Assembly: GCF_000143415.4 (NCBI RefSeq)
Contig: NW_003314382.1
Span: forward strand, 150,210-214,209
DNA from: Selaginella moellendorffii
Taxonomy: Eukaryota > Plantae > Lycopodiophyta
Direction: 5' to 3'
DNA: 64,000 nucleotides
The notes under the pieces are model-generated. The model was not told the origin of the DNA, searched no databases, and saw only the letters and a program-made list of their open reading frames with translations. Made by a program: the position numbers and the translations under genes. Numbering within the stretch: position 1 is the stretch's first letter; each line of letters starts with the position of its first letter. Positions 10,154 to 14,996 of this stretch are shown here, one piece after another.

Positions 10154-10390
10154 CAAGCGACTAGGCTCCAGGACCTCGACAAGAGGATGTCCAGCATGGA
10201 AATGCTACGCTTGGAACAATTCCGTAAAGATTTTTTTATTGTTAATATTCTTAACCACCATAAAATACAGTTCCTTTTTCAAATATTCTAAATAGAATAT
10301 TTGAAAAGGTGTTTTAATTTAGGAACCGTATTTTACAAAGTATGTAAACAGTGGAGACCTAAAGGAAGACACATTTCCTTTACGAGAGTT

Positions 10391-11176
10391 ATGGCGTCGT
10401 GGTTGCAAGCTTTGTTGAACGTGACGGACTTCTTCACAGTGTGTGAACTCCATGCCAACTGCACATCCGGGAAACGCAAGAAGAGCTTCTTCTGCAAGCA
10501 GTGTTTAGTGTCCCTGTGTCAAGAATGCAAAAAGGATCACCGGACTTGCGACTCCCGAAACGCTTTGCAGATCGTAATCTCAGGCCGCCTTACTGCACTC
10601 AAGGCGTGTGAGGCGGAGCGCCTCATCGATACGTCGGGGCTGGAGACGTTTACCATCAACGGAGGCCCAATCTTTTATCTCCACGCCAGGCCCCGAGGAA
10701 TAGAGGTGCAAAACTCGGTACTATGCCGCCACTGCAAGAGGGTGCTGCACGGAGCTCTCTACTGCTCGCTCTACTGCAAGCTCCAGTGTCAAGGGTTCGT
10801 CGCGCATCAGCAAGCCCAAGTCGATCAGGGTCAGGAAAAGAACATTCCGTCACCTTTTGGCGAGGTCGCCCCAGATGGTGATGCGCAACCGAGAAGTGAG
10901 CTCAACGATCATCAAGCCCGGGTCGTTAAGGTCAAGCCAATGGATCGACCTAGGGCTCCCAAGGCGAAAAAGGCTCCATCCGACAGGAAACGAAAGCAGC
11001 CAGAGCAAAGCTCCATTGAGCAAGTTTGTGCGAGGAGGAGAATGGACGAGGCAGTACATGTGTTTAGTGCCCCTTGTAATACTGTCGAGCATGACAAGCG
11101 TCAAGGAGCTCCTGCTCTTCAAGGATTTAGAAAGCGGGCAAGGAAAGGTATCCCAATAAGATCACCCATGTTTTGA
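10391..11176 (+). CDS. PLATZ zinc-binding transcription factor (intronless, divergent)
   Basis: WLQALL..FF..C..H, FC..C..LC..C..H, LIDTSGLETFTING, C..C.R.L...YCSLYCK and the C-terminal KRARKGIPIRSP signature. Confidence 0.85.
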   Translation: MASWLQALLNVTDFFTVCELHANCTSGKRKKSFFCKQCLVSLCQECKKDHRTCDSRNALQIVISGRLTALKACEAERLIDTSGLETFTINGGPIFYLHARPRGIEVQNSVLCRHCKRVLHGALYCSLYCKLQCQGFVAHQQAQVDQGQEKNIPSPFGEVAPDGDAQPRSELNDHQARVVKVKPMDRPRAPKAKKAPSDRKRKQPEQSSIEQVCARRRMDEAVHVFSAPCNTVEHDKRQGAPALQGFRKRARKGIPIRSPMF

Positions 11177-11377: not shown

Positions 11378-12983
11378 TCAACCAGTTGAGTGGAGCGACG
11401 TGGTATCGCTAGCACTCGGTGCACTGCTTGCCTTGAGCTGCTTGATCTCGGCAGCCGAGAGAGCCCGGTTATAAATCCTCAAGCCCGAGAGAGATCCAGT
11501 GAAGAAGTCAACGTTGTCCCGGCAGTCACACCCAAGGTAAACCGGGAGATTGGACACCAAGTTCTTCGCTTCGCCGCTGGCCGATCCGGAGAGCTCTCCA
11601 TCCACGTAGAGAAGACCCTGGTTTCCCTGCCTCACCGCCACGACATGGTGCCACCGATCGTCATTGACGGACGCCGAGGCCGAGAAACGGAATTGGTCGG
11701 CGAAGTCGCCGTACACCCAGAAGCTCGGCTTGCCACCCTCAACGTAGAGCTGATACTCGCCATTATAGCCATCGGTTGTCACCTTGCCGCTCCAGCTCCC
11801 GGGGCCTCGCTGTTGCATGATCACGCCTTTGGATCTGAAAGACGCGGCGATCTTCACCCATGCAACGAGTGTGAATGGCGTCTTGCCGCACAGCGATGCC
11901 CCGCCACCGCAGAAAACTCTCCCCGAGCCCCTGAAAGTGAGGCCGCTACTCGAGCTCCACGACGCGCCGGAGATGGCTCCCGCGGCGTTGCTGGACGAGG
12001 AATCCTTGGCGACGCTGCCGCTTCTCTCGTTCATTTCCCACCAGCCGACGAGGCCGTCGGGAGAGCCGGTGGTGGAGGGAGCTTTGGTCGGGTAGTAGAC
12101 GAACGAGTTAATCGCGCATCGCCCATAGGGGAGACCGTGGTTGCCGCGCTGGATCCTCATGTAGCCATTCTCGCCCCACGAAGTCCCCCAGGAGTTCTTG
12201 ATGATCCAGTAGTCCTCGCCCTTTTCCGAGCCATAGCCGACGATGAGGACCGCCAGCCGGGGCTTGTCCTCCGAGCAAGGTCCCTTGAAAATGCCCTGCA
12301 AGAACGAAGAACAAGTTCTCGACTCACACTCTTTGGATGAATGGAAAGTAGGAACTTACACTCTTGTACTTCTTGAAAGCGTCAGCGTCTCCGTCCACTA
12401 GAGCTGTCACTGGCTGCTTGGCTACGCGCTCGACCATCTCGGCGTCGCTGCTGGAACCCCAGACGTTGTCAAAGCTGTCGATAGTGACCACGAGACCATC
12501 CTACAAAATAAGATACCATCATCGAGATCATGGATAGCTTTCGATCGAGGCTAACCTTCTTCTTGCAAGAGCCAGAGCTTCCAGTGAAAGGATAGTCCGC
12601 CTCCTTGTGCAAGCCGGCACCCTCCTCGAGATAGGGGAAGCTGTTCTGGGGGAAGCCTTTGCTACAACCCGAGTTCCCATAGGCCGTGTCACAGTCGAGG
12701 AGCTGCTGGGCCGAGAGGTCCACGAGCTGTCCAGTCGCAATGTAGTGGACTCCTTCCACGGCAGCAGCAGTTGCAAATGCCCAGCTCCCATCTGGAACTC
12801 GATCCATGAATCAAACCCATGAGAAACTCTTGTAAGAAGCTCACCTGAGCAGTTGTTTCCAAGGGATTTCACTGGCGTCACAGCACCCCTGGCTCGCCAG
12901 TCGATGGACGCTGGAGCAGCAGCGAAAGCTTTCGCCGCAGCAGCGATGAGTACAAGGAGAAGGACTCCACAGGACGATTCCAT
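11378..12983 (-). CDS. Secreted papain-like (C1A) pseudo-protease without prodomain, fused to a LamG/concanavalin A-like domain; exons 12983-12845, 12791-12556, 12500-12360, 12295-11378
   Basis: Signal peptide runs directly into [16 protein letters not shown], then [31 protein letters not shown] and [17 protein letters not shown]. The same exon continues into [13 protein letters not shown]...WHHVVAV...LYVDG...[26 protein letters not shown] lies 36 nt upstream (13019-13024). Confidence 0.85.
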
Positions 12984-13304
12984 GCCTGCAATGGATGATC
13001 CAAGATATCCACACTGGATTTATACTAGAGCTTCGTATGCCCACGCGAGAAATGTGACCTCTGTCTCCCTTACACAAACAGAGGGAAGAAAAACAAAGCT
13101 TTATCTTCCCACGAGAGTCACGAGCTCGGACATTCATGCCTTCGAGAACGATTTGTATCTCCTCACGACTAAAGTTGAAAGTGAAATCTCATTAAAATCC
13201 ACCTCCCATGATCTTCAGCATGGAAGAGATATGGACGTATAGAAAATTACAACCTTTTTATGTCACAACTATCTGTCAAAACTTTGGAGAGTTGGGGACT
13301 TGCT

Positions 13305-14996
13305 CTAGCTGAGATTGGTGACGCGAAGAAGTGCCTTGACAGGCCTGTGATCGGAACTCCGCAAAGAATCGATTGACTGATAGTTGTCAACATCCAGGCT
13401 GATAGAGCTTTCATCTCTAATCTTGATAAGAATTCTATCTGTCCAGGATGGAACCCTTTCCTGATCGTAAACATCACAAGAAATTGTGAGCTGCAAATAT
13501 CCATAGCAGAAATATTCACAAACCTTGCCACTCGTATCATAGTCGTCCGTTCCAACATCGTACTTGTAAGTTGGCTTAAACTCGAGAGGTCCTTCCACGA
13601 ATCCATTAAAGACCTCGCCTTTGTCCACTGCGTTGAAGAGCTGATCGCGTTTCCATAGCAGCTGTGATCCACAGGGAAGAAACCATGAAAACCAGAGAGG
13701 AAAGATTCTGTATCGTACCTTCTCAAGGTTTTGTTTCACGAACGATTTGACGAGACCTCTGCTGCCTTCGATTCTATAGTTTAGATCTCCGAGCCAGACC
13801 ACAACGTCGGACTCGTCCATGAAGTTGCTGCCGGGCTGTTCTTGTGAGGTGCTCGGCGGCGAAAAGATCTTCTGCCGGGTTCGCGAGTACTGAACGTGCC
13901 TCTCGTTCACCTTCTTCTCGTGAGCTGTGTTTTCGTGTTTAGAAACAGTTTTTGGAAGCAAATTCTTCTTTCTTACCGGCAAAGTGGGACGCAATGAAGA
14001 GGAAGGATGAATTGCCGATACAAAAGGACGCGGCTACAGCGCCTTTCTGCCTTCCTACAACTCCACCAAAGCCCTTGAATCGAACTTTATCAACTTTCTT
14101 GGCTGTTTGGCCGTGGGAAGCAAGAAAAACAAACAAACTCTCCAGTGAGTTCAGGAAAAAAGAATGAAAAAAAATATTCATTAGCGGAAAAAGTCAGCCA
14201 AGCTTACCGGATATGTGATGTTGCAGCCAACATTTCCCGAACACGTAGAGCTGCAGCGAGCCCATCACTGACTTTGCCACAAAGCTGTGCGGAAAAGAGC
14301 CACCAAGTCAAAATCCCATCTCTCGAGAAATCAGTTGACATTTGTGTCACTGGAGGAACACACAAATCTAAAGAACCGAAAACATTGCTACGCTATGGCT
14401 AGAAATGGGAAAGATCACACTCCCTACGAAAGAAAGAAGCATACCTGTACTGTTTGCCGAGAATGGGATGGAGAACACGCCTCAGCGAAGAAACTGGCGA
14501 TTCTTGGATCCCAATCACGTATAAGTCGTAGTCACCTCTCCCGTTTTCTAGAAGCTTGGGAAGAGAGTCGTGTGGGATCTGGGAGTCACAGTGTAAGAAC
14601 AAAAAGGAACATTGAGAGATTCGATGTTCATACCTTGCCATTCATGTTCCAAGTCACGGCATAGATCCGGAGATTGAAGGATGCTGTTGAATCTTCTACT
14701 GCCGCGACTGCCGCTGGATGATCATGAATCGGGAGGTGATCGCTCGAGGAGATGGAAGTCTTGCACGAGTGGAAACTATCCAAGGAATTGTCCTCCAGAG
14801 GTTGACCCGATACCGCGTCGTTCTCCTCCATGTCTCCAAGCTCCTGGGATTGGACGAGGATCATCCTCGCGTTGTTCCTCGTTGAGGACGAGGCCAGCCT
14901 GAGAAGACCACTGTCCCTGAACGAGCCAACGATGTGGTCCTTTCTCGACGATCTCAAGAGCAGTCTCTTGACCAGCCCCTTGAAACGCCTGCGCAT
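13305..14996 (-). CDS. Inositol polyphosphate 5-phosphatase (5PTase11-like), multi-exon; start codon uncertain
   Basis: YAVTWNMNGK, DLYVIGIQE, FIASHF, WLGDLNYRI, PTYKY, VPSWTDRIL and SSDHRPV motifs occur across GT-AG-bounded exons. Confidence 0.88.

What the first reader, a model, noticed from the sequence alone, without database searches (positions are those of the whole stretch)
11378..12983. Secreted dead papain with no propeptide, fused to a LamG/ConA-like jelly-roll domain
Seen in the sequence: the signal peptide leads directly into the mature C1A domain within exon 1, with a TATA box 36 nt upstream, so there is no I29 prodomain. The catalytic Cys position reads S (NNCSDGSWAF vs the family QGxCGSCWAF), the oxyanion Gln position reads L, and the catalytic His position reads L (PRLAVLIVG vs LDHAV). 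The Asn (NSWG) and structural Cys are kept and the ORF is intact. The last exon runs without an intron into a ~210-aa domain with LamG_3-type motifs ([42 protein letters not shown]) that I associate mostly with bacterial proteins. Established: plant C1A proteases normally have a prodomain, and their known C-terminal extension is granulin, not LamG. Inference: an apoplastic pseudo-enzyme that could act as a decoy or trap for pathogen protease inhibitors, or as a glycan-anchored binding protein. The LamG part may be horizontally acquired.
Basis: partly seen in the sequence, partly recalled or inferred. Interest (0 to 1): 0.88.

Follow-up and report, generated by a model that had tools for sequence, protein, structure and literature searches.

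The report
Dead papain fused to bacterial-type LamG
A spikemoss (Selaginella moellendorffii) gene encodes a secreted papain-like protein that has lost its catalytic residues and prodomain and carries a LamG binding domain of bacterial ancestry, so it is very probably a binding protein rather than a protease; what it binds is unknown.

Summary
On the minus strand, 12983-11378, lies a 4-exon gene. My gene model is letter-for-letter RefSeq XP_002991605.2, 'cysteine proteinase 7' of Selaginella moellendorffii (477 aa).

- **Protein:** a signal peptide runs straight into a mature C1A domain with no I29 prodomain. Gln19 is Leu, Cys25 is Ser and His159 is Leu. Asn175 and all six structural Cys are kept.
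- **Fusion:** the last exon continues without a break into a Laminin_G_3 domain (Pfam 5e-29; AF2 pLDDT 90).
- **C1 half:** it belongs to a Selaginella clade of already-dead papains that share a one-residue insertion at the active site and identical intron positions.
- **LamG half:** its nearest characterised relatives are an intronless M12-Big_9-2xLamG family in the same genome. That family is collinear with, and 47-50% identical to, Verrucomicrobiales proteins.
- **Constraint:** the two alleles differ with dN/dS 0.20.

The gene is therefore a maintained chimera of a native pseudo-protease and a domain of horizontally acquired ancestry. No other eukaryotic C1+LamG_3 protein turned up. The decoy idea is untested, and the remodelled cleft argues mildly against it. 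The scan had already found and followed up the other allele with the same conclusion. I could not test transcription.

The parts
13019..13024 (-). TATAAA motif, 36 nt upstream of the ATG
   Evidence: Read directly from the sequence. This is a motif match only; function was not tested.
12845..12983 (-). Exon 1. Start codon, signal peptide (about residues 1-21, [21 protein letters not shown]), then directly the mature C1A N-terminus (PASIDWR...). Includes L41, the Gln19 position, at 12863-12861.
   Evidence: Gene model equals RefSeq P0270. The ficin alignment starts at residue 24.
12792..12844 (-). Intron 1 (53 nt, GT-AG), splitting codon 47 just before GSWAF
   Evidence: The position is the same in the dead paralogs P0003, P0004 and P0414.
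12556..12791 (-). Exon 2, the C1A L-subdomain. S49, the Cys25 position, is at 12786-12784.
   Evidence: Pfam Peptidase_C1 7e-22; alignments.
12501..12555 (-). Intron 2 (55 nt, GT-AG)
12360..12500 (-). Exon 3, the middle of the C1A domain
   Evidence: Covered by the ficin alignment.
12296..12359 (-). Intron 3 (64 nt, GT-AG), just before GIFKGPC
12083..12295 (-). Exon 4, first part: C-terminal third of the C1A domain (residues 173-243). L186, the His159 position, is at 12256-12254; N206, the Asn175 position, is at 12196-12194.
   Evidence: Pfam Peptidase_C1 2e-21 on residues 1-70 of exon 4.
12053..12082 (-). Ser/Thr/Pro linker ([10 protein letters not shown]), in the place where paralogs carry a Pro-rich/Cys-rich tail
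   Evidence: pLDDT is low for the first residues of the LamG model.
11402..12052 (-). Exon 4, second part: Laminin_G_3 / ConA-like jelly-roll domain (residues about 254-470)
   Evidence: Pfam 5e-29. AF2 model pLDDT 89.8, pTM 0.88. Foldseek TM 0.6-0.67 to neurotoxin HcN and trans-sialidase lectin-like domains. Trees.
11378..11401 (-). Short Ser/Thr-rich C-terminal tail and stop codon (11380-11378)

Best explanation
This is a real, selectively maintained Selaginella moellendorffii gene for a secreted, non-catalytic two-domain protein.

N-terminal half: a papain-fold (C1A) domain from a lineage-specific clade of PLCPs. That clade had already lost Cys25, His159 and Gln19, and later the I29 prodomain.

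C-terminal half: a LamG_3 jelly-roll appended inside the last exon, where paralogs carry a proline-rich/granulin-like tail.

Source of the LamG: most probably an intronless M12 metallopeptidase-Big_9-2xLamG gene family in the same genome. That family descends from a Verrucomicrobiales-type bacterial gene.

Mechanism (inferred, not shown): the protein enters the secretory pathway and is probably secreted, where it acts purely by binding. The LamG supplies affinity for a glycan or protein ligand, possibly the one recognised by the M12-LamG proteases. The remodelled former substrate cleft supplies a second, peptide- or protein-binding surface. The result would be an adaptor or anchoring protein, not a protease.
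For: Shown:
- The gene model is identical to RefSeq, and both alleles are intact.
- Catalytic positions read L/S/L in place of Q/C/H.
- There is no prodomain and no room for one upstream.
- The six structural Cys and Asn175 are kept.
- LamG_3 scores 5e-29 and gives a confident jelly-roll model.
- Purifying selection between alleles: 15 synonymous against 10 non-synonymous differences. dN/dS is 0.20 overall, 0.10 for C1 and 0.27 for LamG; binomial p = 1e-4.
- All dead Selaginella PLCPs form one clade (SH-aLRT 95). They share a one-residue insertion between Cys22 and position 25, a GFPQ motif and the same three intron positions.
- The LamG sits in a clade with support 98/96 together with the Selaginella M12-LamG domains, Luteolibacter P0163, liverwort proteins and two uncharacterised sequences. 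The Selaginella LamGs group together at 92/78.
- P0121 is collinear with Luteolibacter P0163 (421 bits) and 50% identical at its N-terminal part to a Haloferula MAG protein on a typical bacterial contig. Its first 866 residues lie in one intronless exon.
- Seventy-seven bacterial loci match the M12 N-terminal part, and the best are all Verrucomicrobiales.
- GC3 of the LamG part (0.74) matches the C1 part (0.70), so the fusion is old.
Against: - No ligand, localisation or expression data were obtainable here.
- Monophyly of the Selaginella LamGs has only moderate support. A sister relation of this LamG to the unidentified Logan protein P0002 is not rejected (AU p = 0.23).
- LamG_3 domains often have no demonstrated carbohydrate ligand. 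The closest solved folds, BoNT HcN and the trans-sialidase C-terminal domain, are themselves poorly defined as lectins.
- Former cleft positions vary among the dead subfamilies (position 19 L/R/V; position 177 W/A/R). That could mean relaxed constraint rather than a new binding site.
- C1A proteases normally need the prodomain to fold, so folding of this domain is assumed, not shown.
- The full-length AF2 run gave no usable C1 model because the alignment was shallow.
Confidence: 0.72

Rival explanations
1. Immune decoy or sponge. The dead papain domain mimics active apoplastic PLCPs and soaks up pathogen-secreted PLCP inhibitors (cystatin-like, EPIC/Avr2/Pit2-type). The LamG tethers it to the wall or to a receptor.
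For: The protein is secretory-type and non-catalytic, with the papain scaffold, disulfides, Asn175 and Trp177 kept. It is under purifying selection. The dead clade has expanded in this genome. PLCPs are known effector targets, and Rcr3 acts as a decoy (PMC7382257, PMC11371160).
Against: The cleft is not a faithful copy of an active PLCP. It has a one-residue insertion next to position 25, Gln19 to Leu, Gly65 to Lys, Asp158 to Arg and GG(L/Y)MD to KGFPQ. No pathogen system or inhibitor is known for Selaginella. Nothing here tests binding.
Confidence: 0.15
2. A functionless or decaying chimera: a fortuitous 3' fusion that happens still to be intact.
For: The original JGI models covered only 220 aa. 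The catalytic centre is lost.
Against: Both alleles have intact 477-codon ORFs with canonical splice sites. dN/dS is 0.20, with p = 1e-4 against neutrality. The fusion is old: the LamG is only about 50% identical to its nearest relatives and its composition matches the host part. An ORF that old would not stay open without selection.
Confidence: 0.07
3. Still an enzyme: Ser49 acts as a nucleophile with some other base (silicatein-like or serine-hydrolase-like chemistry), with the LamG as a substrate-targeting module.
For: Cys to Ser is the substitution seen in silicatein (6zq3 is among the PDB hits). Asn175 is kept. A new conserved His sits in the 'RGNHGLP' loop of the prodomain-less subclade.
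Against: His159 is Leu and the oxyanion Gln19 is Leu, so there is no general base and no oxyanion hole. Sister dead paralogs have Gly or Asn at position 25. Silicatein keeps its His.
Confidence: 0.04
4. The whole C1+LamG gene was acquired from bacteria, where the same domain pair exists.
For: An ESM-Atlas cluster from Bacteroidota (76 members, about 723 aa) carries LamG_3 in 89% and Peptidase_C1 in 49% of its members (score 0.82, a lead only).
Against: The C1 half nests inside plant PLCPs, within a Selaginella-specific clade. It shares three intron positions and an active-site insertion with paralogs that lack LamG. Its best matches outside Selaginella are plant RD21/XBCP3-type enzymes.
Confidence: 0.02

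Closest known systems
Plant RD21/XBCP3-type papain-like cysteine proteases (C1A with a granulin tail)
   Same: Same fold and family. They are 47-49% identical over the mature domain and are the best matches outside Selaginella. They also carry a C-terminal extension after the 'YPTK' end of the protease domain.
   Different: Those enzymes have an I29 prodomain, the Gln/Cys/His/Asn catalytic set and a granulin domain. This protein has none of the first three catalytic residues, no prodomain, and a LamG_3 domain in place of granulin.
Selaginella prodomain-less dead PLCPs ('zingipain-1/-2' RefSeq names; P0003 cluster), with P0414 and P0461
   Same: Nearest relatives of the C1 half (62% identity). 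They share Cys25 to Ser and His159 to Leu, the one-residue insertion, the GFPQ motif and the intron positions. The P0003 group also lacks the prodomain.
   Different: They end in a Pro-rich/Cys-rich tail or nothing, never in LamG. P0414 and P0461 still have I29. The P0003 group has Trp177 to Ala, whereas this protein keeps Trp.
Selaginella M12-Big_9-2xLamG family (P0121 and others) and its Verrucomicrobiales homologues (Haloferula, Luteolibacter, Rubritalea)
   Same: Nearest characterised relatives of the LamG half (about 50% identity). They share the subfamily signature VIIQQR...NG.YQL...GKP.FWVYG...WHH..AVRD...IY.DG...G.D.RD..FF.GSL.
   Different: Those are zinc metallopeptidases with an intact HExxHxxGxxH motif and tandem LamGs. 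Here a single LamG is attached to a dead cysteine-protease scaffold.
Non-catalytic C1A homologues: soybean P34 / SPE31 (PDB 2b1m), silicatein alpha (6zq3), animal TINAG/TINAGL1
   Same: All are secretory-pathway papain-fold proteins with the nucleophile Cys replaced (Gly in P34/SPE31, Ser in silicatein and TINAG) that work by binding or by other chemistry. SPE31 and silicatein appear among the PDB sequence hits. TINAG combines a dead cathepsin-like domain with adhesive modules (my own knowledge, not tested here).
   Different: They keep a prodomain or other N-terminal modules. Silicatein keeps His. None has a LamG_3 domain. They arose independently in other C1A branches.
Rcr3/Pip1-type immune PLCPs (guarded decoy)
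   Same: Secreted PLCP scaffolds used as bait for pathogen inhibitors (PMC7382257, PMC11371160).
   Different: Rcr3 is catalytically competent, is made as a proenzyme and has an unaltered cleft. No guard, effector or infection link is known for this protein.
Marasmius oreades agglutinin (MOA) chimerolectin
   Same: A lectin module and a papain-like fold in one polypeptide (PMC4764322, PMC8244254).
   Different: MOA is fungal, carries a ricin-B lectin, has a different papain-like family domain that is not C1A, and is an active protease.

Membership tests
Peptidase family C1A (papain-like), as a fold/homology family | Significant match to the Peptidase_C1 profile over the whole mature domain | tested here: met
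   PF00112 scores 7e-22 (exon 2) and 2e-21 (exon 4). phmmer to ficin gives 8e-58 over residues 24-244, matching residues 2-219 of the mature chain.
Peptidase family C1A (papain-like), as a fold/homology family | Three conserved disulfides (Cys22-63, 56-95, 153-200) | tested here: met
   C45, C80, C89, C122, C179 and C232 align with the six positions. Actual bonding was not tested.
Active C1A peptidase | Catalytic Cys25 and His159, oxyanion Gln19, Asn175 | tested here: not met
   The positions read S49, L186 and L41. Only N206 is kept. This is a non-peptidase homologue.
Active C1A peptidase | I29 (ERFNIN-type) inhibitory prodomain between the signal peptide and the mature domain | tested here: not met
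   There is no PF08246 hit. The mature domain begins at residue 24, straight after the signal peptide. Only about 320 nt lie between the ATG and the upstream gene.
RD21-like (granulin-containing) PLCP subfamily | C-terminal Pro-rich linker plus granulin domain | tested here: not met
   There is no PF00396 hit; LamG_3 occupies that position. The paralog P0003 keeps a Pro-rich/Cys-rich remnant.
Laminin_G_3 (PF13385) / ConA-like lectin-glucanase superfamily | Profile match above the gathering score | tested here: met
   101.8 bits against a cut-off of 27.6, E = 5e-29, profile positions 12-151 of 151.
Laminin_G_3 (PF13385) / ConA-like lectin-glucanase superfamily | Two-sheet jelly-roll fold | tested here: met
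   The AF2 model has pLDDT 89.8 and pTM 0.88, with 13 strands. Foldseek gives probability 1.00 and TM 0.6-0.67 to clostridial neurotoxin HcN and trans-sialidase lectin-like domains.
Lectin (carbohydrate-binding protein) | Demonstrated or residue-level predicted sugar-binding site | not testable with these tools
   Only fold-class similarity is available. No ligand-site mapping was possible.
Horizontally acquired sequence (LamG half) | Nests among bacterial sequences, with a patchy distribution in eukaryotes | tested here: met
   The clade with support 98/96 mixes Selaginella and Calypogeia with Luteolibacter and a protein of bacterial-type architecture, and lies inside otherwise bacterial diversity. 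Among plants only Selaginella and one liverwort appear. The linked M12 part is 47-50% identical to Verrucomicrobiales proteins.
Horizontally acquired sequence (LamG half) | Direct transfer into this gene, rather than transfer via a resident family | tested here: inconclusive
   The Selaginella LamGs group together at 92/78. The alternative grouping with P0002 is not rejected (AU p = 0.23).
Guarded decoy / inhibitor sponge (Rcr3-like) | Binds pathogen PLCP inhibitors; cleft mimics that of active targets | not testable with these tools
   Binding cannot be tested here. The sequence shows a remodelled cleft, which argues mildly against mimicry.

The most novel reading that the evidence does not exclude
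The LamG-tagged dead papain is one arm of a lineage-specific extracellular system built on bacterial spare parts. Selaginella domesticated a Verrucomicrobiales surface metalloprotease (M12-Big_9-2xLamG). It then re-used that protein's targeting domain on a pseudo-protease from an expanded dead-PLCP clade. This produced a non-cleaving competitor, adaptor or bait that recognises the same glycan or protein target as the M12 enzymes. Possible roles are a regulator of wall-protein processing or a microbe-sensing bait.
Probability: 0.12. Interest if true: 0.8.

Novelty: new variant of a known kind. Interest (0 to 1): 0.58.

Why it matters
Pseudo-proteases are known, and so are single horizontally acquired genes in plants. 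This locus joins the two. A module from a bacterially derived gene family has been spliced onto a native enzyme scaffold that was already inactive, and the product has been kept under selection.

It gives a concrete, clonable case for three questions:
- How do plants recycle foreign domains?
- What can a papain fold do without its catalytic residues and its folding prodomain?
- What do the widespread but functionally obscure LamG_3 domains bind?

It also shows that the RefSeq name 'cysteine proteinase 7' is misleading for this gene, and that the 'zingipain' names are misleading for its dead paralogs.

Tried and rejected
1. Mixed alignment for a full-length model. A combined C1 and LamG alignment (A1) mis-aligned the C-terminal third of active PLCPs onto the LamG, so I discarded it.

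2. Full-length AF2 model. The run on a cleaned but shallow alignment (A5) gave pLDDT of about 25 for the C1 half. That reflects only 9 C1 rows in the alignment. It says nothing about folding and I did not use it.

3. Transcript evidence. Exact-protein look-ups for both alleles returned only the genome scaffolds, so transcription stays untested here.

4. Unidentified Logan protein. No DNA is available for the contig encoding P0002 (SRR7121812), and the run accession appears in no paper. Its organism stays unknown.

5. Literature. Searches by gene, locus and accession identifiers, and by topic, found nothing on this gene or on the M12-LamG family.

6. Whole-gene bacterial origin. Rejected on shared introns and the C1 phylogeny.

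7. Long-branch artefact for the dead clade. Rejected because its members share a one-residue insertion, the GFPQ motif and the intron positions.

8. PDB by sequence. The search found no solved relative of the LamG half.

Full report
**What is there.** The window is nuclear DNA of the lycophyte Selaginella moellendorffii (scaffold GL377686.1). On the minus strand between 12983 and 11378 I built a four-exon model: exons 12983-12845, 12791-12556, 12500-12360 and 12295-11378. The introns are 53, 55 and 64 nt, all GT-AG. Its 477-aa product is identical to RefSeq XP_002991605.2, 'cysteine proteinase 7' (P0270). The second haplotype of the assembly carries a syntenic allele of the same 1606-nt length (P0001, locus L001). 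In both, a 5-phosphatase gene lies upstream and a PLATZ gene downstream. The original JGI models covered only 220 aa.

- Pfam finds Peptidase_C1 in exons 2 and 4, and Laminin_G_3 (5e-29) later in the same exon 4.
- Against solved structures the C1 half matches mature ficins, actinidin and papain over their whole length. For ficin, E = 8e-58, with query residues 24-244 on residues 2-219. The hydrophobic signal peptide is therefore followed at once by the mature N-terminus, and there is no I29 prodomain.
- Only about 320 nt separate the ATG from the upstream gene, so no prodomain exon can hide there.
- The same alignment, and a 175-sequence alignment of C1 domains, place Leu41 at Gln19, Ser49 at Cys25 and Leu186 at His159. 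Asn175 (N206), Trp177 and the six disulfide cysteines are kept.
- A TATAAA motif lies 36 nt before the ATG (13024-13019). I could not test whether it is used.

**Origin of the papain half.** The nearest relatives are other Selaginella proteins. The first is a cluster of nine 'zingipain-1/-2' models (P0003 and others) at 62% identity. These also read Ser/Leu at the catalytic positions and also lack a prodomain. P0414 (53% identity) is dead (Gly/Thr) but still has I29. P0461 is dead (Ser/Thr), has I29, and is named granulin-containing by UniRef.

In a maximum-likelihood tree all of these form one clade inside plant PLCPs (SH-aLRT 95). The order is P0461, then P0414, then the prodomain-less group, which splits into the P0003 cluster and the window gene. 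P0461 and P0414 are long branches, so I looked for characters that do not depend on the tree. Every member has a one-residue insertion between Cys22 and position 25. The window gene, the P0003 group and P0414 share 'GFPQ' where active enzymes have 'GG(L/Y)MD'. The window gene, P0003, P0004 and P0414 have their three introns at exactly homologous positions. Activity was therefore lost first, the prodomain second (an internal loss within exon 1), and the LamG was added last, inside the last exon, where the paralogs carry a Pro-rich/Cys-rich tail or nothing.

**Origin of the LamG half.** I ran an exhaustive HMMER search of 1.84 billion representatives and three word-seeded searches. Only the two alleles of this gene carry both domains.

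By per-domain score, the best LamG matches are:
- an unidentified Logan protein (P0002, 54% identity);
- a Selaginella family of 853-959-aa proteins (P0121 and others, about 50%);
- Verrucomicrobial proteins (Luteolibacter P0163; Rubritalea);
- proteins of the liverwort Calypogeia fissa (48-54%).

A careful tree places the window LamG in a clade with support 98/96. That clade also holds the Selaginella family, Calypogeia, P0002, Luteolibacter P0163 and a protein of bacterial-type architecture, and it is nested in otherwise bacterial diversity. The Selaginella LamGs group together with moderate support (92/78). A window-plus-P0002 pairing is not rejected (AU p = 0.23).

The Selaginella family has the architecture M12 (HEAGHNWGSSH) - Big_9 - LamG - LamG. 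It is collinear with Luteolibacter P0163 over more than 900 residues. Its N-terminal part is 50% identical to P0266, a Haloferula MAG protein that sits among RuvX, GatC, GatA and ribosomal protein L9 genes. Residues 1-866 are encoded in one intronless exon on a 400-kb plant scaffold. A scan of 185,579 prokaryotic species genomes with the M12 part returned 77 loci, and the top ones are all Verrucomicrobiales.

The most economical reading has three steps. First, a Verrucomicrobiales-type gene entered the Selaginella lineage. Second, it multiplied. Third, one of its LamG units was copied onto the 3' exon of a dead PLCP gene. The event is old. The LamG is only about 50% identical to its nearest relatives, and its GC3 (0.74) equals that of the C1 half (0.70), against 0.91 in the Haloferula homologue.

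**Is it maintained?** The two alleles differ at 25 coding sites, 15 synonymous and 10 non-synonymous, and at 6 of 172 intron sites. dS is 0.046, dN is 0.0092 and dN/dS is 0.20 (0.10 for C1, 0.27 for LamG). The deficit of non-synonymous changes has binomial p = 1e-4. Together with an ORF that has stayed open since an old fusion, this argues for function. I could not test transcription. An earlier follow-up on the other allele states that the gene is transcribed; I treat that as unchecked.

**Structure.** The LamG half, modelled with a 50-row alignment, gives a confident jelly-roll (pLDDT 89.8, pTM 0.88). Its best structural matches are the HcN subdomain of clostridial neurotoxins and the C-terminal lectin-like domain of trypanosomal trans-sialidases (TM 0.6-0.67). 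This confirms the fold class but names no ligand. The full-length run failed for the C1 half because that half of the alignment was too shallow.

**How it most likely works.**
- *Shown:* it cannot use papain chemistry, because the nucleophile, the general base and the oxyanion Gln are all absent.
- *Shown:* it has a secretory signal, and it combines two intact-looking domains.
- *Inferred:* it acts by binding. The LamG provides targeting, possibly to the same ligand as the M12-LamG proteases. The remodelled cleft provides a second interaction surface.

However, the cleft differs from active PLCPs at several contact positions: the insertion at 23/24, Gln19 to Leu, Gly65 to Lys, Asp158 to Arg, and GFPQ. 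These positions also differ among the dead subfamilies. That fits poorly with mimicry of active enzymes, though it does not exclude diversification under an arms race.

**Comparison with what is known.** By homology the protein is a C1A member but a non-peptidase homologue. In that respect it resembles soybean P34/SPE31, silicatein and animal TINAG, each of independent origin. It fails the tests for an active PLCP and for the RD21/granulin subfamily. Its LamG passes the PF13385 test.

The domain pair may exist independently in Bacteroidota (ESM-Atlas cluster, a lead only). The plant gene's introns and C1 phylogeny exclude a whole-gene transfer. No paper mentions the gene or the M12-LamG family.

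**Verdict.** This is a real and unusual gene: a new variant (a new domain architecture with chimeric ancestry) of a known kind (a secreted pseudo-protease). Its function is unknown. The scan had already reported and followed up the other allele (s1-334481) and the M12-LamG family (s1-337366), and my independent tests agree with both.

Noticed in passing
L002:6001-8586 (S. moellendorffii scaffold GL377695.1); related models P0273-P0276 on two further scaffolds: An intronless M12 metallopeptidase-Big_9-2xLamG gene family in Selaginella with an intact HExxHxxGxxH motif. It is 47-50% identical, and collinear, with Haloferula, Luteolibacter and Verrucomicrobiaceae proteins, which makes it a strong bacteria-to-plant transfer candidate. 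The annotated C-terminal about 90 residues of P0121 look like spurious spliced read-through.
   Followed up: partly
L006:6066-11172 (scaffold GL377565.1): Two prodomain-less dead papain genes (P0004, P0003) lie in tandem. Between them, on the opposite strand and head-to-head with P0003, is a 413-aa gene with no Pfam match. An earlier scan note proposes partner modules for dead papains; I did not examine this.
   Followed up: no
Proteins P0234, P0277, P0278 (Calypogeia fissa, 14-15 Mb contigs): A liverwort carries the same LamG subfamily (48-54% identity), single or doubled, behind an unrelated about 320-aa N-terminal region with no Pfam match. This looks like a second, independent recruitment of this bacterial-type LamG in land plants.
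   Followed up: partly
Protein P0002 (Logan assembly of SRR7121812, 3425-nt contig; no DNA available): This is the best single LamG match (54% identity). It is preceded by a 'WFWRVD' module that also precedes the LamG in Luteolibacter P0163 (48% identity over 284 aa). Its first 30 residues look like a translated AT-rich intron, and a 659-aa ORF ends 25 nt upstream. It may be an M12-LamG orthologue in another plant. The organism is unknown.
   Followed up: partly
ESM Atlas cluster, rank 37: A Bacteroidota cluster (76 members, about 723 aa) in which 89% of members carry LamG_3 and 49% carry Peptidase_C1. The domain pair seems to exist independently in bacteria.
   Followed up: no
Proteins P0003, P0004, P0284-P0288 (Selaginella): In the prodomain-less dead paralogs, the Ser that replaces the catalytic Cys completes an N-G-S glycosylation sequon (GCQNGSWAF), and Trp177 is replaced by Ala. 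The window gene has neither change.
   Followed up: no
window 13247-13994 (-) and 10301-11176 (+): The flanking genes are an inositol-polyphosphate-5-phosphatase-like gene (Exo_endo_phos2) about 320 nt upstream and a PLATZ zinc-finger gene converging about 200 nt downstream. Both are syntenic on the other haplotype, and there is no transposon at the fusion gene.
   Followed up: partly
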